Source: Octopus bimaculoides (taxonomy: Eukaryota). Taken from it: DNA of 43,297 nt. The position numbers and the translations under genes were made by a program. Positions 8,859-23,865 of the stretch are shown one piece after another (position 1 is the stretch's first letter; each line of letters opens with the position of its first letter). The DNA is taken from positions 11,250,404-11,293,700 of the forward strand of contig NC_068985.1 of NCBI RefSeq assembly GCF_001194135.2, in the 5' to 3' direction. Under the pieces are notes generated by a model. The model did not search any database. It saw only the letters and a list, made by a program, of their open reading frames with translations, and was not told where the DNA came from.

Positions 8859-9742
8859 ATAATTAGTAGGATATTTGAAAAACGGAAATCAATTTCATTA
8901 TTCGATTTCTGTCAAATTGATATATGCACGTTCATCTGTATGATTTATGCGTAGAGCGGCATCACCTCATGCTATTCTTTTCGATTATATAAAGGAGACG
9001 ATGTAATTTTACTAATCTACTGCTGCTATTTCCCGTAGGTCAAAGGGATCATGAAGATGCACACTCGTCGGTTAATGGGACAAGGGTTTACCTGAGAATC
9101 AGTATTCTAAGAACGGAAACAAAAGGAACGTTTCTAGGATTTGTACAAAACGGAGAAATTTTTAAAATATTTTTGTGGTAATTTGGAAATAAAACTTCAG
9201 AACCATGTTTATATGCAAGTAAAAGAATACATATAAACGTAATATATATCTCTCGTATCACAATAACTTTTCATAATCTTGCATTTGGCATTTTAGCATT
9301 AACCTGAAGAAAATGTCAAGAGTTAAATCTCCAGGAATACAAACAGCGAGCGATATATATGGAGATGACAGACGCAAAAATACACACAGCCAGGCATACA
9401 CATAAAACCTCAGAGATGCACGCAATACATACACGCATACACAAACGCACACACAAACATATACATATAAATACATATTAATGCGTTTATATGTCTAATT
9501 TCATGTATGTATGCATAGTGTCATCCTCAAATGAATGCTGTTGACCTTAGTAATTGCTTAGGTCGACAATTTATTTTCACACATACACACACAGATACAG
9601 AAATTCACACACAAATGTATATTAAGTGTATGAAATGTAAATAACAAACACTAAGACACTATACAGGTTGCGTAGGCAAATGTTAAACACGCACAGGTCG
9701 ACTGTGGTTTCCAAAATCGCATATTGATTGTTATCATATATA

Positions 9743-9744
<2 letters not shown>

Positions 9745-9800
<56 letters not shown>

Positions 9801-10360
9801 NNNNNNNNNNNNNNNNNNNNNNNNNNNNNNNNNNNNNNNNNNNNNNNNNNNNNNNNNNNNNNNNNNNNNNNNNNNNNNNNNNNNNNNNNNNNNNNNNNNN
9901 NNNNNNNNNNNNNNNNNNNNNNNNNNNNNNNNNNNNNNNNNNNNNNNNNNNNNNNNNNNNNNNNNNNNNNNNNNNNNNNNNNNNNNNNNNNNNNNNNNNN
10001 NNNNNNNNNNNNNNNNNNNNNNNNNNNNNNNNNNNNNNNNNNNNNNNNNNNNNNNNNNNNNNNNNNNNNNNNNNNNNNNNNNNNNNNNNNNNNNNNNNNN
10101 NNNNNNNNNNNNNNNNNNNNNNNNNNNNNNNNNNNNNNNNNNNNNNNNNNNNNNNNNNNNNNNNNNNNNNNNNNNNNNNNNNNNNNNNNNNNNNNNNNNN
10201 NNNNNNNNNNNNNNNNNNNNNNNNNNNNNNNNNNNNNNNNNNNNNNNNNNNNNNNNNNNNNNNNNNNNNNNNNNNNNNNNNNNNNNNNNNNNNNNNNNNN
10301 NNNNNNNNNNNNNNNNNNNNNNNNNNNNNNNNNNNNAGAGAGAGAGAGAGAGAGAGAGAG
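9745..10360. repeat. (CA)n and (AG)n microsatellites flanking gap 9801-10336
   Basis: Direct inspection. Confidence 0.95.
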
Positions 10361-10700
10361 CCTACGGTGATCTCTCACGACGAGGGGCTGCGTGCACTTT
10401 AACATTTTCTTGACCTCCGACCCAACCCACAACCCGGCACCTCAACATTTCTCGGGAGTGGCCATGGGAACGAGAATGGGCCCCAACTATGCGAACCTGT
10501 TCGTTGGCTATGTTGAAGCACAAATATTCTTAAGTTTCACTGTTCCTACTCCCGAACTATATCGCCGTTATATTGACGACTGTAACGGCGCCACCTCACT
10601 CTCCCACGAACATCTAGACTCGTTCCTCTCTTTTGTCAAATCCTTCCATCCGGCCCTCCACTTCTCCTGACACCTCTGTCTCCTTTTTCCAAATTCCAGA
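10361..10700 (+). mobile_element. Penelope-like element (PLE) reverse-transcriptase relic with internal deletions
   Basis: TVISHDEGLRAL*HFLDLRPNPQPGTST, then GVAMGTRMGPNYANLFVGYVE...RRYIDD...SFHPALHFS. These are the PLE RT motifs GxAMG..P.YANLF and RYIDD. Confidence 0.9.
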
Positions 10701-10789
10701 CGAATCCTCATTCTCTTCCTCGGTTCTCTCCATCATGTTCAGCAGTATTTTTTCTTACTTACCCATCAAGGGGTGAATTCTAAAGAGAC

Positions 10790-11800
10790 CATACGGAATG
10801 TTCGCACTCATGAGCGTCTTGGCTCACGAAATCGGGGATCCCGGACGTTCTGGCAAATCTGCAACAATATTCCTTCTCTTTTTCATTATGACTTGGAAGG
10901 ACAAGGATGAGCTATTAGTTTGGCAGTTCTGTACGATTTTTAATATAGGTAACAATGGCCATCCACTGCTTGAGTTTGATGTAAGCGCTCGTAACACACG
11001 CGCCATCTTCCGTATGACAGCTCCAATGGTCATGACTAAGATATTTGATCGATACAAGGCTGCTGTCCTTGTTGGTACACTGGGAGTTGTTTTGCAGCGA
11101 CATAGCCCTGAACTATCCCGTTACATTCGAACTCGCTCAACTAATTTCTATTTGAATCTTGCTTCCATATTGTTGAATATCTTCATCTGCTATTCCGTTA
11201 CTTTAGAATAATGGACAATAGTCTGACCACACAGTTATCATCCTACAAGTCTCCTTCCTGCGATTAGTAGGTCTTTGAACGCTATTATTAAGGTACCTTC
11301 GGTCCAGTGCCTTGAATTTCCCGCTCTTATTTCAGATTTTTCAATATGACTTTTGTAAATCTAGATCTGCTATTGACGTTTTAACTGTCATATCCGAAAG
11401 TCTCTATAGTTACTTGTTGATGAGGCTTTTGACAAGTGTGGAACGCTGAGATGATCCATAAACTCAGAGGCTATCGTCTGTCTGGGTGTCTGAGCCTTTA
11501 TTTAACATCATTAAATCGTTTCGTTGAAATCGTTTGCACAAGAAGGTTCCTGATGACCAGCAGTCAATGCCACGTGTTATCAATACTAGAGTACCTCAGG
11601 GTTCTGTATTTAGTCTTTTTCTGTTCCTCCACTCCACTTCTGTAACTTGGGAACTGTGAAGATGATTCAATGGTTGAATACATCCTACCAACTGTGTCTG
11701 TTCTGAATAGTGATGATCACCTGCAGAACAGAATCACAGACTCTGAAGTCTAAGATGAACCAATCTTCGGGATGGATCGCGAAATCTATAAGGTCAGAGT
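10790..11800 (+). mobile_element. Degenerate Jockey/CR1-group LINE ORF2 (pre-RT linker and RT domains)
   Basis: Across frames: GSRTFWQICNNI; FDRYKAAVLVGTLGVVLQRHSPELS (LDxxKAxGPDxIP..LK.CSPEL); ESCF; LISDFQYDFCKSRSAIDVL (LLSDxQYGFR..RST.DLL); FDKVW; INTRVPQGSVFS (IN.GVPQGSVL). Confidence 0.85.
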
Positions 11801-15248: not shown

Positions 15249-15275
15249 TAGATAGATAGATAGATAGACAGATAA
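15200..15275. repeat. (AT)n-(AGAT)n microsatellite
   Basis: Direct inspection. Confidence 0.9.
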
Positions 15276-15573
15276 GTCTGTGCGTACATATAGACAGGTA
15301 TGTGTGTATAAGTATAGTTACCATATGAATTAAGATCCCCGTTGACAGGCCGCTGGCATTAAATATAGCGCTAAATACAGAAAGCATACAGATTAGTAGC
15401 TCCAATTATCTAAAGCTACAGGATTTGTTGTATATATAAACAGAATCGCTACTTGACACTCTGCCATTGACCAAGTGATTGTCCACACCTCTGATAAGAA
15501 CACAATTCCAGGAAAGTTGTTCACATTTTTGTCGCGTCTACGACGAAATAGTTACATAAATTCTGCGTCGCGT

Positions 15574-17226
15574 TCATGAGGTTACATTCACTCGCGTCAT
15601 TCGTGCTACATTCTTCCATCGATTCTTAAACATTTCTGCAGTCAGGCATTTCCTGCCTAGCTCTATTTTCCTTTTAAGGTGAAAGGTGAAATAATTCACC
15701 AGTGCAGATCTAGAGATGAAAATGCCTGACCTTAATCCTTTCATCCTCGTTCTCCAAATTACCTGTCTCGCAATTGCTACCACAGCGAGAAAATAAATCT
15801 TACCTTCTTTCGAGAGGAAATCCGGCGGGTCAATTTTTACTTTTGATTCAGACGATAGCTGTACTCTTCCTGTAACTGACAACAGTTGTTCAGCACACAC
15901 CCACACATCCGACACCTCCGAACATTGTACAATAGCGTGCGGAACGGTTTCCCTGTCCTGCCCACATCTTGGACAAGTCGGAGTGTCGGGGCCACCATGC
16001 CTTGCGAGTTTGTCCCGAAGAGGTAAGGCCCCTCGGTAACATTGCCATACCAGAGACTTCTGAAAGTTATCCAGGGTCATCGGCCCGAATGTACGTCGGA
16101 ACAGACTGGTCAGCTGATTATCGTCGAGACCAAGGGTTTCCCCTAAGGTGTCATCACATTTCGCCTCTGCAAGCCCTCTATAGAAGAATGCGGTGGAACC
16201 CCCACCGCAGGCATTGCCCGAGCGACGGAATGGCAGGAGTGCCTTGCGACGCTCCGTATACCATGCACCNNNNNNNNNNNNNNNNNNNNNNNNNNNNNNN
16301 NNNNNNNNNNNNNNNNNNNNNNNNNNNNNNNNNNNNNNNNNNNNNNNNNNNNNNNNNNNNNNNNNNNNNNNNNNNNNNNNNNNNNNNNNNNNNNNNNNNN
16401 NNNNNNNNNNNNNNNNNNNNNNNNNNNNNNNNNNNNNNNNNNNNNNNNNNNNNNNNNNNNNNNNNNNNNNNNNNNNNNNNNNNNNNNNNNNNNNNNNNNN
16501 NNNNNNNNNNNNNNNNNNNNNNNNNNNNNNNNNNNNNNNNNNNNNNNNNNNNNNNNNNNNNNNNNNNNNNNNNNNNNNNNNNNNNNNNNNNNNNNNNNNN
16601 NNNNNNNNNNNNNNNNNNNNNNNNNNNNNNNNNNNNNNNNNNNNNNNNNNNNNNNNNNNNNNNNNNNNNNNGAATACATTGGCTACCTCCGCCCTCCTTT
16701 TCAGGGATAGCCACCGCCAAAACCAGGTCTTGACTATGTGGGTTACCCTGCTCGATACCTCGGCCCAGTTATTCTCTATTTGGAGGTCTGGTCCAAACCA
16801 AACTCCTAGCAACTTAATCGGACCCTCCGTCCAACGTCCCACGACGCTGTCAGGAGGCATCGACTTGCCTCTCCAGGTGCCGAGCTGCAAGCCGACTGAC
16901 TTTTCACGATTAACTTTTGCTCCTGCTACCGTCTCGTAAACCTCAATGGCCTTGCCTACCCTCTCTAGGTGATCCAATTCGGTTACGATGACGGTGATGT
17001 CATCCGCGTAAGCTGAAACCAATTTTCCACAACCTGGCTCTCTCGGAATGCCGCTCAATTTTCGCAGTAATGACTCAAGGGTCATCACATACAAAATCGG
17101 GGAGAGCGGATACCCTTGACGAACCGAGAGTTTGATGTTGAATGGCTTCGATAAGAAGCCGTTCACCCGAACTACCGAGTCGATGAAAAGTATTGCAAAT
17201 CCACAACTCTCGCATCCTATGTACAC
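15574..17226 (-). mobile_element. Tx1-clade LINE ORF2: RT domains 3-7 plus C-terminal zinc-binding (zf-RVT) region; gap 16270-16671 inside
   Basis: SVRQGYPLSPILY, VSAYADDITV, IKLLGVWF, then LDNFQKSLVWQCYRGALPLRDKL..CPRC..DRETVPHAIVQC. The frame is open on each side of the gap. Confidence 0.95.
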
Positions 17227-18631: not shown

Positions 18632-18839
18632 AAAAAAAAAATTTTTATCCCCCTAAACTTGAAGATTACCGAATTTTAACCTAGACGTGGTAAAATGAGG
18701 CACAAACCATTTTATGAGTTAGCGACAATTTCTCTGTATCTCATGTGGAAATTGAAACAGCAATGCCAGATAGTTTCAATAATTATTCCAAATATCTGAG
18801 AAATTTTATTCAGTTGGTAATCATAACATGCACGGGAAA

Positions 18840-18891
18840 GGCGGTGAGCAGACAGAAATGTTAGCACGCCGGTCGAACTGCTTCGCGGTAT
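18840..18891 (+). mobile_element. 5' part (A-box side) of a family-A tRNA-derived SINE interrupted by Tx1 insertions
   Basis: ggcggtgagcagacagaaatgttagcacgccggtcgaactgcttcgcggtat aligns with the intact heads at 23278 and 23649 and stops at the cggtat motif. Confidence 0.85.
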
Positions 18892-20523
18892 AACGTCTCC
18901 GTGAATTATTGTGAATACTGTTGTGTTACTTTGTGAAAATTGTCTCGGTGAATAATTGTGAATTTGGTGGAATTATTACGGTTGCATTTCACGTGAGCTG
19001 CTGCATTTTTCCCAGTTATGGCAAGTGGTAGTGTCTCCAGTATGGAGAGCTACGCCAAGGCCACTGCGGGTGAGGAAGCCAGTGCCTCTGGAAACCAAAT
19101 TAATCAAGTTGGATATGGAGGAGGTAACCAGAAGCAGGAATTTGATAGAAGTTGAGGGAGACTCGTACAAATTGTGTCCCCCAAAAGAGACTAAAGAAAT
19201 TAAAATTCTGAGGACAGTAGTGTATCGTACACAGGCTGTCGAAATCGGTAAAATTGAAATGGTGACGGAAGAGGAAATCGAGGAGTGCCTGGGTGAAACT
19301 GTCAATGAAGCCACGTACATCAACAGAGGAAGAAAGTTCGGTACGGTTGAGGTGAGGTTCGCCACTATAGAAGAGGCAACCAAGCATGCAACCAACATAT
19401 TAAGAAGTGAGAAAATAGCATTGCTACCAAGCCATAGAGGAAGAAGAAGTGTGAAAATGCGAATTCCTAGAGTTACACCAGATATTAAACCAGAGTGGTT
19501 GGTTGCAACAGTGCTGGCTGCAACCAAGGAGGAGCCGGAATTGGGACCAGTGGCGAAAACAGTGTGCAAATGGTGGGTATTTAGACTCGAAATGTGGCAT
19601 TTTGCCACATTCGAAGACATAGAAAGAATTCCCTACCAGATAGAAGTTGAAGACGAGAAAACGTTAAATGTCATAGTCGAGGGAAGAAAACCAAATTGTT
19701 ATATATGCGGGGAGAGAGGTCATATGAAGACCAAATGCCCTCTATATGAATTCACACAACCACAGCAAGAGAAAGCACAAACAGAGGAGGAAAGAATTGT
19801 TGACCACACTGAGGAAATAAAAGAGAGACAGAAGTGTGAAACGGAGAAAAGAAAGGAGAAGAACGAAAATGTGGCTACCCTAAAAAGCGAGGGAAAAATA
19901 AGTCAAAGGAACGGTCAACAGAAAACATAAAAGAGATAAAAGAAAGTCAGAAACTAATAATGTACAAGAAGAGGAGGAGAGAACGGATAAAGATGTAAAA
20001 TACAAGGGGCTTTTGATAAAGTACGAGAATTGCGAGCAGATGGAGAGAAAAGACGAGAGGTTAGAAGAAATAATAAGAGTGAAAATGCCAGAGAAATGTG
20101 CTGAAAAATGCATTTTGATACGTGAGGAAAGATGCTTCGAGTGCATAAAAGAACTTGGTGAAAATATAAAAACGAAACGGATATGGTTGTTGGAGACACC
20201 ACCCTCTAGAACTAATTATTTGCAGTTGTTAAGGACGGACGTAACAATGATTAATGGAAGAAAGGTAACGCGAGTGTTTTGATTTTTTTTGAGTAACAAA
20301 ACCGTTAAAATGTTAACATGACGTAGAACGTAAAAGTGAAAAACTGGATAAATGTAACCACCCGACTTCGGGGATCGAGTGGACATTGCGCCTCATTTTT
20401 TTCATTCTTGCATATTATCATTTTATTTTAATTACCCCGATTTTATGTTTGCGTTTTGTACTGTCTTTGTTTTGTGATGTCTTAAAAATTCTTTGTATAG
20501 CCCTTTATGGGTAAGAAAGAAAT
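18892..20523 (+). mobile_element. Element E1: ORF1-only Tx1-clade retroelement (5'UTR + gag-like ORF1 + 3'UTR/tail)
   Basis: gtgaa-rich 5'UTR, ORF1 with zinc knuckle, T-rich 3'UTR ending gccctttatgggtaagaaagaaat. Bounded by target-like motifs at 18886 and 20524. No endonuclease or RT motifs seen. Confidence 0.8.
19025..20282 (+). pseudogene. Tx1/L1-type ORF1 nucleic-acid-binding protein (RRM-like region + CX2CX4HX4C knuckle), probably with two frameshifts
   Basis: Open frame 19025..19930 has RGRKFGTVEVRFATIEEA and CYICGERGHMKTKC. An out-of-frame ATG at 19042 gives MESYAKA (SYA motif typical of the ORF1 N-terminus). An overlapping frame from ~19922 runs on to the stop at 20282. Confidence 0.8.
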
Positions 20524-20529
20524 CGGTAT

Positions 20530-21874
20530 AACGGCTCTCTGAAGTTAATACGTGGTGATTTTTTAATTGGTGTTTGTGCTGCTTTGCAGCGGTTTGGGTG
20601 TTTACGTGTGTAATTTGTTTGATCTTTCTCTCCTCTTACGAGAAGAGACAACTGGTTGAAGAATGTCTGAAGACAGTTATTGTTACTCAGACATGTCATC
20701 GTCCGAGGAGGAGTTGCTGGAGGCATTTAAGACAATGGACAAGAAACTGATAAAAGAGAAGCGGAATTTTGCTGATGTAGCAAGGTGTAAGGAAACAGAA
20801 GTGGATATCAGGAATTTGGAAGACAGAAAGAAGAAATGAACCGAGATGGGTTTGAAGTGAAGCTGTTGCCTTCCAAGCGGTTAAAAACGGAATTAGGGGC
20901 AAGACGATAATATATCGAACCTTTTCGATAAATAAATGAAAAATAGACCTTCTCACGATAGAACTGTAAGGCCCTACTGCTATTCCGGCGCTCGGGTAAC
21001 TCCAGCGGTGGGAGTTCCCCACGAATTTTATATAGTGGGTTGGTAGAGTCTGAATGTGACGATGGCTTCGTGGCGACATTAGGTCTCGGGTATGTTAAAC
21101 TGGACAGCCTGTTCCATCGTGCATTCGGGTTGAGAATGCTGGATATCTTCCAAAATTCCTTGACCTGACAATGTTACAGAGGTGCCTTGCTCGTTTGGGA
21201 TAAGCCCACAAGACATGGTAAGCGTCAGTTTCCGACCTGTCCAAGATGCGGGGGAGACAGGGAAACCGCCCCTCACGCTATTGTCCAGTTTCCGGTGATA
21301 TCTGAAATGTGGGTTTATGCTGAACATATGTTGTCCGGCGAAGGAAGAGTACGGCTGTCGACTGAATCAATTATAAAAATTGAACCACCGGGAGTTTTAA
21401 CAAACGAAGGTAAGAATTGTTTTCTCACGGTTGTAGCAATAGCGAAAGAGGCAGTATGGAAGACTAGGAAAAAAGGAATTAAGACAGGCAACTTTATCTC
21501 TGGCCACAATTTACGATCATTTTTTACTTTTCATTTGAAAAGGAAGGTGTGGCTGGAGAAGAGGTGTCTGTCGGAGAGAATGTTCAAAAAGAGATGGAAG
21601 CGTGTTGCCCGAGTGTTGTGCGTGCAAGGAACCGTATGATTAGGCTATAAAAGAATAATAAAAAAGGTACCAGCGATAGACCGTGGCTTGTGGGTTCGGA
21701 GCGTGGCCTTATCATCGCTACATTTGTGTTGTTTGTAGTGTTAATTCCATTCAATTTTTTTTATATTTCATATAATTTTTATATTCATATTTTATGTAAA
21801 ATCATAACGTATTACTGATCCTAATCAGTTGTTTTGTACATTTGTGTTTGGCCCCCTGTGGGCAATGAAGAAAT
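20530..21874 (+). mobile_element. Element E2: internally deleted Tx1-clade LINE (5'UTR + ORF1 N-terminus joined to ORF2 C-terminus + 3'UTR)
   Basis: ATG at 20663 gives MSEDSY...KRNFADVAR (58 aa). TIIYRTF..KIDLLTIE is homologous to E1 TVVYRTQ..KIEMVTEE. From ~20968, KALLLFRRSGN...QCYRGAL...CPRC..DRETAPHAIVQ runs to the stop at 21639 and is co-linear with 15574-16250. Tail gccccctgtgggcaatgaagaaat. Confidence 0.9.
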
Positions 21875-22045
21875 TGGTATTTCGTCTGTGTTTACGTTCA
21901 GAGTTCAAATTCCGCCGAGGTCGACTTTGCCTTTCATTCTTTCGAGGTCGATAAATTAAGTACCACTTGCGTAATAGGGCCGATCTAATCCACTGGCCCC
22001 TTCCCTCAAAATTTCGGGCCTTTTGCCTAGAGTAGAAAAAAATAA
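21875..22045 (+). mobile_element. 3' remainder (B-box, core, tail) of the split family-A SINE
   Basis: tggtatttcgtct...gagttcaaattccgccgaggtcgactttgcctttcattctttcgaggtcgataaattaagtacc...aaatttcgggccttttgcctagagtagaaa. Joined to 18840-18891 it gives a complete copy co-linear with 23649-23865. Confidence 0.9.
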
Positions 22046-22371
22046 TAACATACACAGGAACAAAAGTGACGTGCCATAATTTTGCTTGAATATCAATTTG
22101 TAATGCAAAGATTCATGTTTATCCCATACTATTCACATTCCTAATATTGCCTCTGGTATAAAATATCAAACCATCCGTTTACACAAAGCCTTTCAGAGTA
22201 ATCAACATATCGTAATAGATGCTTAGAAACACAAGCCTTCCCTATTTCTATAATCAAAAGGATGTAGTAGCAGTCCAAGTATAAGCTACTATATAAAACC
22301 AGCGTTCAGTGGCTGCACAATTGTTCTCGGTGTGGTCATTGCTATAAGTTACTTCTCAACTTTAAGTGTGG

Positions 22372-22747
22372 AGGCGCAATGGCCCAGTGGTAAGGGCAGC
22401 GTGATCGCGGTTTCGATTTCCAGACCAGGCGTTGTGAGTGTTTATTGAGCGAAAACACCTAAAGCTCAACGATACTCCGGCATGGTATGGTGGCGAACCC
22501 TGCTGAACTCTTTCACCACAACTTTCTCTCACTCTTGCCTCCTGTTTCTGTTGTGCCTGTAATTCAAAGGGCCATCCTTGTCACGCTGTGTCACGCTGTG
22601 TCACGCTGAATATCCCCGAGAACTACGTTAAGGGTACACGTGTCTGTGGAGTGCTCAGCCACTCGCACGTTAATTTCACGAGCAGGCTGTTCTGGTGATT
22701 GGATCAATCGGAGCCCTCGTCGTCGTAAGCGACGGAGTGCCAACAAC
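22372..22747 (+). mobile_element. Full-length tRNA-derived SINE (family C)
   Basis: Head aggcgcaatggcccagtggtaagg (A-box) and ggtttcgatttcc (B-box), GC-richer body, tail cgtcgtaagcgacggagtgccaacaac; internal (gtcacgctgt)x3. Confidence 0.8.
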
Positions 22748-23277: not shown

Positions 23278-23503
23278 GGGCGGCGTGCTGGCAGAATCAT
23301 TAGCACGCCGGGCGAAATGCTTAGCGGTATTTCGTCTGCCATTGTGTTCAGAGTTCAAATTACGCCGAGGTCGACTTTGCCTTTCATCCTTTCGGGGTCG
23401 ATTAGATAAGTACCAGTTACGCACTGGGTTCGATGTAATCGACTTAACCCCTTTTCCTTCATTGTCCCCTTTATGTTTAACCCTCTGTGAGTAATAAAGA
23501 AAT
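23278..23503 (+). mobile_element. Family-A SINE with Tx1-type 3' tail, flanked by a 16-bp target-site duplication
   Basis: A-box tggcagaatc, B-box gagttcaaatt, core gcctttcatcctttcggggtcg, tail gtttaaccctctgtgagtaataaagaaat. TSD atattaatattgaata (23262-23277) / atattaatattcaata (23506-23521). Confidence 0.9.
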
Positions 23504-23648: not shown

Positions 23649-23865
23649 GGCGGCGAATTGGCAGAAACGTTAGAACGCCGGGCGAAATGTTTAGCGATAT
23701 TTCGTTTGCTGCTACTTTCCGAGTTCAAATTTTGCCGAGGTCGACTTTTCCTTTCATCCTTTCGAGGTCGTTTAAATAAGTACCAGACACGTACTGAGGT
23801 CGATGTAATCGACTTACCCACTCTCCGAAAATTTCAGGCCTTGTGCCTCTAATAGAAATGATTAT
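23649..23865 (+). mobile_element. Family-A SINE with the alternative tail (aaatttcaggccttgtgcc...gattat)
   Basis: Same head and core as 23278, different 3' end. Confidence 0.9.

What the first reader, a model, noticed from the sequence alone, without database searches (positions are those of the whole stretch)
18840..22045. Two Tx1 retroelements stacked head-to-tail at one fixed site inside a tRNA-SINE head: candidate SINE-targeting site-specific LINE system
Seen: SINE head 18840-18891 | E1 | E2 | SINE remainder 21875-22045. Removing E1 and E2 restores a complete SINE co-linear with the intact copy at 23649. The three junctions carry cggtataacgtct (18886-18898), cggtataacggct (20524-20536) and tggtatttcgtct (21875-21887); an intact head reads cggtatttcgtct (23278 copy). 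The site lies between the Pol III A- and B-boxes. Established: Tx1-clade LINEs often have sequence-specific APE endonucleases (Xenopus Tx1L into Tx1D; Keno/U2, Mutsu/5S, Dewa/tRNA arrays), and tandem stacking is typical of site-specific LINEs. Inference: this lineage targets a high-copy SINE, or its parent tRNA, as a safe harbour and breaks the SINE promoter on insertion. The shared aa in the two upstream motifs means either E2 inserted first and E1 later duplicated the mutated copy, or both elements begin with AACG and the true TSD is only (c)ggtat. I do not recall this target being described, but I cannot search the literature.
Basis: partly seen in the sequence, partly recalled or inferred. 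Interest (0 to 1): 0.85.

Follow-up and report, generated by a model that had tools for sequence, protein, structure and literature searches.

The report
LINE relics targeting an octopus SINE
Two defective copies of an L1/Tx1-type jumping gene in the octopus genome sit head-to-tail at one exact nucleotide inside a short repeat (a SINE), and a third copy at another locus sits at the same nucleotide. This lineage therefore appears to aim its insertions at that SINE, a new target for a known habit of such elements.

Summary
One SINE, with its own 16-bp target-site duplication, is split at 18891/18892 by E1 (18892-20523) and E2 (20530-21874). A (C/T)GGTAT hexamer sits at all three junctions. Both elements start AACGKCTC and end AAGAAAT.

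The window is Octopus bimaculoides. E1 is an ORF1-only element and E2 is internally deleted, so neither is autonomous.

Decisive new evidence: the only other family copy I could fetch is 92-94% identical to E1. It lies at the same nucleotide, in the same orientation, in a different SINE copy on chromosome CM046603.1. That makes three events at one site.

A sister family in O. vulgaris has a full-length member with APE endonuclease, RT and zf-RVT domains. It is also site-specific, but for a different repeat, and it forms head-to-tail piles. More distant relatives with the same 3' tail lie in unrelated flanks.

A SINE subfamily carries this LINE group's 3' tail.

Not shown: a genome-wide census, placement in the Tx1 rather than the L1 clade, the length of the recognised sequence, and any parent tRNA.

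Verdict: a real, probably site-specific LINE with a new kind of target, a SINE. It is a new member of a known kind, of moderate interest.

The parts
18823..18838 (+). Left copy of the host SINE's own target-site duplication (ATAACATGCACGGGAA)
   Evidence: Matches 22045-22060 at 14 of 16 positions
18840..18891 (+). SINE head, consensus positions 1-52, with an A-box-like motif; it ends in TSD copy 1
   Evidence: Aligns to positions 1-52 of the intact copies at 23279 and 23649
18886..18891 (+). Junction hexamer CGGTAT, copy 1 (target-site duplication of the LINE insertions)
18892..20523 (+). E1: ORF1-only non-autonomous LINE derivative with intact 5' end (AACGTCTC) and 3' end (AAGAAAT)
   Evidence: 92-94% identical over its full length to L009:9591-10936. 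ORF1 homologues P0001-P0005 and P0007 are from O. bimaculoides. No RT sequence is present.
19018..20282 (+). Decayed ORF1 of E1 (frameshifted); the CCHC zinc knuckle lies at about 19694-19741
   Evidence: Pfam zf-CCHC, E 9e-5. tblastn of P0050/P0005 runs to 20270.
20501..20523 (+). E1 3' tail with a small hairpin (CCC..GGG) followed by AAGAAAGAAAT
20524..20529 (+). Junction hexamer CGGTAT, copy 2, between E1 and E2
20530..21874 (+). E2: internally deleted LINE of a second family (5' UTR and ORF1 start joined to the ORF2 C-terminus and 3' UTR), with both ends intact
   Evidence: Its 5' UTR cannot be aligned with E1 beyond the first 14 or so bases.
20663..20839 (+). Short ORF, presumed N-terminal remnant of E2's ORF1
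   Evidence: no database match, so the assignment is inferred from position
20968..21639 (+). ORF2 C-terminal remnant of E2 (the CX2C...H...C zinc-binding region and downstream)
   Evidence: 70% nt identity to window 16245-15574. 61% aa identity to the O. vulgaris F family. 50-62% to P0008-P0017.
21852..21874 (+). E2 3' tail with hairpin GCCC..GGGC followed by AATGAAGAAAT
21875..21880 (+). Junction hexamer TGGTAT, copy 3 (C to T at a CpG)
21881..22044 (+). SINE remainder, consensus positions 53 to the end, with a B-box-like GAGTTCAAATTCC and the second type of SINE tail
22045..22060 (+). Right copy of the host SINE's target-site duplication
23279..23503 (+). Intact SINE copy with an unoccupied target (GCGGTAT|TTCGTC). 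Its last 45 or so bases are the LINE group's 3' tail. It is flanked by a 17-bp TSD (ATATTAATATTSAATAG) in non-SINE DNA.
23649..23860 (+). Intact SINE copy of the other tail type, with an unoccupied target
15574..17226 (-). 5'-truncated copy of a related LINE family (RT and zf-RVT), orthologous to O. vulgaris element F. It is not in a SINE and its 3' end is unclear.
   Evidence: (I18); compare the ORF2

Best explanation
E1 and E2 are dead, non-autonomous derivatives of two related families of an APE-endonuclease LINE lineage in Octopus bimaculoides. The lineage belongs to the L1 superfamily and is most likely the L1-Tx1 group. E1 is ORF1-only, like mammalian HAL1. E2 is internally deleted.

The lineage integrates by target-primed reverse transcription at one fixed site in the head of an abundant tRNA-like SINE. 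The bottom strand is nicked at GCTTAG^CGGTAT. The top strand is cut 6 bp downstream, at CGGTAT^TTCGTC. This gives a 6-bp (C/T)GGTAT duplication, a fixed orientation and precise full-length 5' ends (AACGKCTC...).

Each insertion regenerates the hexamer on both sides, so a later insertion can land at the same place. This produces the head-to-tail stack E1|E2.

Both relics must have been copied in trans by an autonomous relative. That relative would recognise the shared 3' tail, a small conserved hairpin followed by AAKRAAGAAAT. A SINE subfamily has borrowed the same tail.

Shown:
- the anatomy, the junctions and the TSDs;
- three events at one nucleotide in two different SINE copies;
- the APE, RT and zf-RVT architecture, and site specificity, in the sister family;
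- the shared tail.

Inferred:
- the nick positions;
- that the endonuclease, rather than another step, sets the specificity;
- mobilisation in trans;
- that separating the A- and B-box-like motifs silences the occupied SINE copy;
- the 'safe harbour' benefit.

The order of insertion of E1 and E2 is unresolved.
For: - Anatomy.
- One interrupted SINE with its own TSD.
- Organism and family copies.
- Independent third event. L009 (O. bimaculoides CM046603.1) reads ...gcttcgtGGTAT|aacggctctgtgaatt...gggtaataaagaaat|cGGTATttcgtctgcc. E1' is 92-94% identical to E1. The flanking SINE head is only about 79% identical to the window's and carries a different tail type. The two loci are therefore not copies of one composite.
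- The AACGKCTC start does not track the local SINE sequence, and its likeness to the target is not significant. It belongs to the element.
- Sister family in O. vulgaris. The pile has eight ORF1-only units, then a full-length element F (Exo_endo_phos, RVT_1, zf-RVT), then a truncated copy. Each is preceded by a 13-bp TSD, CA(A/C)C(A/C)TGGAGGAAA.
- A single unit sits at the same site of the same 1-kb or so repeat on another chromosome. The unit is 97.5% identical to the pile units, while the flanks are 94% and 88.5% identical.
- The E2 ORF2 C-terminus is 61% identical to the F family.
- The homologue P0011 matches human L1 ORF2p at E 3e-50, against 4e-24 for R2.
- Shared tail and hairpin: 95.8% of cells paired, with two compensatory changes.
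- Published precedent for Tx1-clade families that target other transposons: PMC4494074 and PMC3706591.
Against: - Only three events in two loci. About 15 other SINE copies with the target stand empty in the 85 kb examined. Occupancy is therefore low, and no denominator of family copies exists.
- No autonomous master with an endonuclease was found for the E families themselves.
- A SINE copy with the same tail (23279-23503) inserted into AT-rich non-SINE DNA with a 17-bp TSD.
- Relatives with the same tail lie in a tandem-repeat-like sequence (L008), an (ATT)n run (L024) and unrelated sequence (L001, L025). The tail alone does not imply this target.
- Both occupied heads carry the minor variant gcttCG. 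This may mean a narrower target or donor-derived sequence. The variant also occurs in one empty copy.
- The SINE head is not recognised as a tRNA.
- Tx1 clade placement was not tested.
Confidence: 0.72

Rival explanations
1. Short-motif preference rather than recognition of the SINE. The endonuclease may only prefer a 6-8 bp word such as CGGTAT/T. The SINE would be hit simply because its hundreds of thousands of copies supply most genomic instances of that word.
For: With three events, the length of the recognised sequence cannot be measured. A SINE with the same tail went into TGATATTAAT, which resembles TGGTATT. Relatives have varied flanks.
Against: All three events are in the SINE, in one orientation and at one nucleotide. 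The sister family's two loci share about 0.5 kb of flank on each side and a 13-bp TSD, which indicates long targets in this group.
Confidence: 0.15
2. One compound event. E1-cggtat-E2 arrived as a single insertion. It could be a read-through or template-jumped transcript of a stack that formed in another SINE copy. Or the arrangement spread by ectopic recombination between SINE copies.
For: In the O. vulgaris pile, neighbouring units share junction variants in blocks. That pattern suggests array duplication as well as insertion. In L009 a second SINE head broken at position 53/54 lies 25 bp upstream of the occupied head. This could be read as 5' transduction of a donor SINE head.
Against: The stack at the donor would still need two insertions at the same site. 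The L009 copy is a single element at that site in a different SINE.
Confidence: 0.1
3. Artefact: mis-assembly of a short-read scaffold, or chance juxtaposition of unrelated fragments.
For: The window comes from a gapped assembly with many N runs and microsatellites.
Against: There are no gaps within 18840-22060. Junction-spanning sequence shares only 6 bp with any alternative path. The host SINE's own TSD brackets the whole structure. The same junctions are seen at a second locus.
Confidence: 0.03

Closest known systems
Xenopus laevis Tx1L inserted in the piggyBac-type DNA transposon Tx1D (Christensen et al. 2000, as cited in PMC4494074)
   Same: An APE-type LINE of the L1/Tx1 group inserts at one fixed site of another, multicopy transposable element, in a fixed orientation and with a short TSD.
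   Different: The target here is a SINE (a retroposon), not a DNA transposon. The endonuclease of the octopus family has not been found or assayed. The two copies in the window are non-autonomous relics.
Crocodilian Tx1-Mar families and SINEU, both preferentially inserted in Mariner-N4_AMi (Kojima 2015, PMC4494074)
   Same: Tx1-type LINEs have a transposon as target, together with a SINE that depends on them. Related families have different targets (microsatellites, LTR elements, Harbinger).
   Different: In crocodilians the LINE and its SINE share a third-party target. Here the target is itself a SINE of the family from which one subfamily carries the LINE's tail. The tail-sharing SINE copy in the window is not at the specific site.
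Zebrafish Keno (U2 snRNA), Mutsu (5S rRNA) and Dewa (spacer of tRNA-Leu) (Kojima and Fujiwara 2004, as cited in PMC4494074 and PMC3706591)
   Same: Sequence-specific LINEs that use multicopy Pol III or snRNA-type units as landing sites. Tandem or repeated occupancy is seen.
   Different: Those targets are functional RNA genes or their spacers. Here the target is a retroposed SINE head that no tRNA model recognises.
HAL1 ('half-L1') ORF1-only elements of mammals (Bao and Jurka 2010; from my own knowledge)
   Same: E1, E1' and the O. vulgaris 1.78-kb units keep the 5' UTR, ORF1 and 3' UTR but have no ORF2. They exist in several copies.
   Different: They belong to a different LINE lineage and are site-specific. 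Mobilisation in trans has not been shown.
Stringent-type LINE/SINE tail sharing, such as eel UnaL2/UnaSINE1 (Kajikawa and Okada 2002, cited in PMC4494074)
   Same: The LINE families and a SINE subfamily share about 45 nt of 3' tail, with a small conserved hairpin followed by a short A-rich end.
   Different: Recognition of the tail by the reverse transcriptase was not tested here.

Membership tests
Target-specific L1/Tx1-type (APE) non-LTR retrotransposons | ORF2 with an N-terminal APE endonuclease, a reverse transcriptase and a C-terminal zinc-binding domain | tested here: met
   Met for the lineage, not for the two relics. The sister element F (L021:14785-17907) has Exo_endo_phos, RVT_1 and zf-RVT. 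E2 keeps only the C-terminal part, 61% identical to F. E1 has no ORF2. The homologue P0011 best matches human L1 ORF2p.
Target-specific L1/Tx1-type (APE) non-LTR retrotransposons | ORF1 with a CCHC zinc knuckle | tested here: met
   Pfam zf-CCHC in E1 ORF1, P0001 and P0006.
Target-specific L1/Tx1-type (APE) non-LTR retrotransposons | RT phylogeny places the family in the Tx1 clade rather than L1 proper | not testable with these tools
   No Tx1 reference sequence or names were available. The top representatives carry no names. Indirect support only: published octopus repeat annotations list L1-Tx1 and no other L1-type group among the LINE families they name.
Target-specific L1/Tx1-type (APE) non-LTR retrotransposons | A large share of copies flanked by the same sequence at the same position (Kojima 2015 uses more than 20% of flanks) | tested here: inconclusive
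   3 of 3 events in 2 loci are at SINE position 52/53, and one of the loci was sampled without regard to its flanks. The sample is far too small for a family-wide fraction, and no eukaryotic genome search was available.
Target-specific L1/Tx1-type (APE) non-LTR retrotransposons | Fixed orientation, precise junctions, a short constant TSD, and head-to-tail stacking at the site | tested here: met
   Stacking is also seen in the sister family.
ORF1-only (HAL1-like) non-autonomous LINE derivatives | 5' UTR, ORF1 and 3' UTR with both LINE termini, no ORF2, and several copies | tested here: met
   E1 and E1'. Six distinct O. bimaculoides ORF1 proteins. O. vulgaris 1.78-kb units.
ORF1-only (HAL1-like) non-autonomous LINE derivatives | Mobilised in trans by ORF2 protein of an autonomous relative | not testable with these tools
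   Inferred from the shared 3' tail only.
tRNA-derived SINE (SINE2) | A head that derives from a tRNA, with internal A and B boxes | tested here: inconclusive
   A-box-like TGGCAGAATCA and B-box-like GAGTTCAAATT are seen by eye. ARAGORN and Rfam find no tRNA. The literature classes the main octopus SINEs as tRNA-Core and tRNA-Deu.
tRNA-derived SINE (SINE2) | Dispersed copies with TSDs and a LINE-derived 3' tail | tested here: met
   About 19 copies in 85 kb. TSDs at 18823/22045 and around 23279-23503. Tail shared with the LINE group.

The most novel reading that the evidence does not exclude
A LINE lineage has evolved to aim at the promoter region of the very SINE family that lives off its machinery. 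The SINE would then serve as an almost unlimited safe harbour. Each insertion would also disable a competitor copy by pulling its A and B boxes apart. That would be a direct, sequence-encoded feedback between a LINE and its own SINE, conserved across at least two LINE families (E1-type and E2-type).
Probability: 0.25. Interest if true: 0.7.

Novelty: new member of a known kind. Interest (0 to 1): 0.5.

Why it matters
Site-specific LINEs are the natural models for programmable, RNA-templated DNA insertion. Each new target specificity adds a natural endonuclease/target pair to compare.

A SINE as target would be a new class of landing site. It is extremely abundant, harmless to the host, and here related to the LINE's own dependent SINE.

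That relation bears on how LINEs and SINEs coexist in octopus genomes, where SINEs are the largest repeat class. It also matters in practice for repeat annotation: 'SINE head, LINE, SINE remainder' composites and head-to-tail LINE piles will be misread as chimeric families unless the target site is known.

Tried and rejected
1. **Census by exact protein look-up.** P0001, P0005 and the window's own E2 ORF were not on record. Only P0050, an isoform found through its cluster, gave a second O. bimaculoides locus. All 12 look-ups are used.

2. **Scans of metagenome and prokaryote-genome collections.** The E1 5' end gave 0 hits. The tail/target junction gave only bacterial chance matches. These collections hold no octopus DNA.

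3. **Protein searches for E2's ORF2.** No close family member is in the databases. The best hits are 50-62% identical.

5. **tRNA origin of the SINE head.** ARAGORN, Rfam at gathering threshold, and Rfam at E up to 10 all find nothing.

6. **Is the element's AACGKCTC... start a diverged copy of the target sequence downstream of the site, meaning a longer TSD?** Rejected. Its similarity is no better than shuffles, and it does not follow the local SINE variant.

7. **Is the leading CACATGGAGGAAA of the O. vulgaris units the element's 5' end?** Rejected. It is a locus-specific 13-bp TSD.

8. **The tail-like match at 10750-10772 (-).** It has two mismatches and no E1/E2 homology beside it. I treat it as chance.

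9. **Literature searches for a SINE-targeting LINE or for octopus Tx1 target specificity.** No description was found in the held library. Repbase Reports cannot be searched.
Full report
**What is there**

The window is eukaryotic, AT-rich and full of microsatellites and N gaps. ORF1 homologues identify the organism as Octopus bimaculoides.

Between 18840 and 22044 lies one copy of an abundant SINE of about 215 nt. Positions 1-52 of the SINE are at 18840-18891, and positions 53 to the end are at 21881-22044. Intact copies lie at 23279-23503 and 23649-23860, and further copies at about 30.2-30.6 kb and 42.3 kb on the minus strand.

Joined in a script, head and remainder are colinear with the intact copies over their full length, at 78-82% identity. 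The split copy has its own 16-bp target-site duplication (18823-18838 and 22045-22060, 14 of 16 matching). It was therefore one SINE insertion that was interrupted later.

**The inserts**

Two elements lie in the same orientation:
- E1 is 18892-20523.
- E2 is 20530-21874.

The hexamer CGGTAT, CGGTAT and TGGTAT stands at 18886, 20524 and 21875. The intact SINE reads GCGGTAT|TTCGTC. The pattern is therefore a 6-bp target-site duplication made twice. The T in the third copy is a CpG transition.

Both elements begin AACGKCTCYSTGAA and end with a related tail...CCCYYTRTGGGYAAKRAAGAAAT. Otherwise their 5' UTRs do not align.

E1 holds only a decayed ORF1 with a CCHC knuckle, plus a 3' UTR.

E2 is an internal-deletion derivative. 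It has a 5' UTR, 58 codons of a presumed ORF1 start, and then the last 220 or so codons of ORF2 with the 3' UTR.

Neither element encodes an endonuclease or a reverse transcriptase. They are relics of two families, not two whole LINEs.

**Is the site specific?**

No tool here searches eukaryotic genomes by DNA, so I went through proteins. The cluster of one ORF1 hit contained a RefSeq isoform whose locus could be fetched. This is L009, O. bimaculoides chromosome CM046603.1.

There, an E1-like element (9591-10936) is 92-94% identical to E1 over its whole length. It sits in another SINE copy at exactly the same nucleotide and in the same orientation...gcttcgtGGTAT|aacggctctgtgaatt ... gggtaataaagaaat|cGGTATttcgtctgcc.

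The surrounding SINE differs from the window's. Its head is about 79% identical and it has a different tail type. The two loci are therefore not copies of one composite.

This locus was reached without reference to its flanks. The count is now three insertion events, of two families, at one nucleotide of the SINE.

The AACG start travels with the element, it does not follow the local SINE variant, and it is no more similar to the target than shuffled sequence. The duplication is therefore only the hexamer.

About 15 other SINE copies in the 85 kb examined have the site empty.

**The lineage**

A 5'-truncated relative in the window (15574-17226, minus strand) has RVT_1 and zf-RVT domains.

Through a more distant ORF1 hit I obtained an O. 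vulgaris locus, L010/L021. It is a head-to-tail pile:
- eight ORF1-only units of about 1779 bp;
- then a full-length element F, whose ORF2 has Exo_endo_phos, RVT_1 and zf-RVT domains;
- then a truncated copy.

Each member is preceded by the 13-bp duplication CA(A/C)C(A/C)TGGAGGAAA.

On another chromosome (L022) a single unit sits at the same position of the same repeat, which is about 1 kb long. The unit is 97.5% identical to the pile units, while the flanks are only 94% and 88.5% identical. This sister family is therefore also site-specific, for a different repeat.

E2's ORF2 remnant is 61% identical to the F family. A 912-aa homologue matches human L1 ORF2p far better than R2.

The group is thus an APE-type, L1-superfamily LINE. 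Published octopus repeat annotations list L1-Tx1 and no other L1-type group among the LINE families they name. I could not place the RT in a tree, so 'Tx1' remains likely but untested.

**The tail and the SINE**

The last 45 or so nt are shared by:
- E1, E1' and E2;
- the O. vulgaris units and F;
- LINE copies in O. sinensis (L008) and Argonauta (L024);
- a subfamily of the SINE itself (window 23279-23503; L009 11112 and 36125; L022 3068).

A 4-bp hairpin in the tail is kept in 95.8% of cells, with two compensatory changes. This fits a 'stringent' LINE/SINE partnership, in which the reverse transcriptase recognises the tail.

The tail does not by itself imply the SINE target:
- The SINE copy at 23279 went into AT-rich unique DNA with a 17-bp duplication.
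- L008 lies in a tandem-repeat-like sequence.
- L024 lies in an (ATT)n run.
- L001 and L025 lie in unrelated sequence.

Target choice therefore differs between families. That is the pattern described for the Tx1 clade, whose reported targets include Tx1D, U2, U5, 5S, microsatellites, Mariner-N4_AMi, LTR elements and Harbinger (PMC4494074; PMC3706591).

**How it most likely works**

An autonomous member encodes an APE endonuclease that nicks the bottom strand at GCTTAG^CGGTAT. The tail of the RNA, from the master or from ORF1-only and deleted derivatives in trans, is reverse-transcribed from that nick. The top strand is cut six bases further on.

Full-length cDNAs are joined precisely, giving the constant AACG start. 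Both flanking hexamers remain usable, so later insertions stack head-to-tail.

The site lies between the A-box-like and B-box-like motifs. An occupied copy should therefore lose Pol III promoter function.

All steps after the anatomy are inferred. The order of E1 and E2 cannot be told.

**Rivals**

- A short-word preference that merely finds most of its words in SINEs cannot be excluded with three events. I give it about 0.15.
- A single compound insertion or spread by recombination is about 0.1. It would still need a stack formed at this site elsewhere.
- Mis-assembly is unlikely, about 0.03. There are no gaps, the junctions are unique, the host TSD brackets the structure, and the same junctions occur at a second locus.

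**Novelty**

LINEs of this group that target other transposons are well known. I found no description of a SINE as the target, nor of target-specific LINEs in octopus, in the searchable literature. Repbase entries could not be checked.

I class it as a new member of a known kind. The more interesting reading is that the LINE aims at its own dependent SINE. It is not excluded, and I give it about 0.25.

Noticed in passing
L009:9463-9538: A second SINE head (consensus 3-54) ends at ...gcttagtagtatt, one or two bases from the same site. Next come 25 nt of A-rich sequence (gctttaaaaagaaaagaaaagtcaa) and then the occupied SINE head. It may be another event at the site, in which a donor's SINE head was carried along at the 5' end (5' transduction). 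It may also be just a neighbouring fragment.
   Followed up: partly
L009:11106-11130; L009:36140-36105 (minus strand); L022:3060-3090: Three times, in two species, a SINE ending in the LINE-type tail is followed at once by a SINE that starts at consensus position 15 (aagaaat|aagaaacgttagcac). This suggests a dimeric SINE family, or a second preferred landing point in the SINE head.
   Followed up: partly
L010:4268-18505 with L021:13160-20240 (O. vulgaris OX597814.1): A pile of eight ORF1-only units, a full-length LINE and truncated copies. Junction variants are shared in blocks of neighbouring units, so the array probably grew by duplication as well as by repeated insertion.
   Followed up: partly
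window 20340-20400; L010:5870-5915: The 3' UTR of the ORF1-only elements keeps a conserved block (aatgtaacc..cga.ttcggggatcgagtgg.cattgc) between O. bimaculoides and O. vulgaris, although ORF1 is only 48% identical. It can be drawn as a hairpin. The ORF1-only design therefore seems old.
   Followed up: no
window 22372-22745: A different tRNA-like repeat (ggaggcgcaatggcccagtggtaagg...ggtttcgatttccagacc), followed by a short gtcacgctgt tandem repeat. It is probably another SINE family. ARAGORN does not call it.
   Followed up: no
window 15250-15574 (minus strand): The related 5'-truncated LINE copy has a 3' UTR unlike that of its O. vulgaris orthologue and lacks the AAGAAAT tail. It runs into a (TA)n/(TAGA)n microsatellite. 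Its true 3' end and target are unclear.
   Followed up: partly
L023 (ENA ERZ26052130 ctg11195c, organism unknown): A 26-kb contig carries several same-orientation copies of a related LINE (ORF1 of 401 aa, a second ORF of 395 aa, ORF2 of 1153 aa). It looks like another pile and was not analysed.
   Followed up: no
window 18880-18891 and L009:9579-9590: Both occupied SINE heads read gcttCG(c/t)ggtat where most copies read gcttAGcggtat. The variant also occurs in one empty copy (L009:3918). It may mark a preferred target variant.
   Followed up: partly
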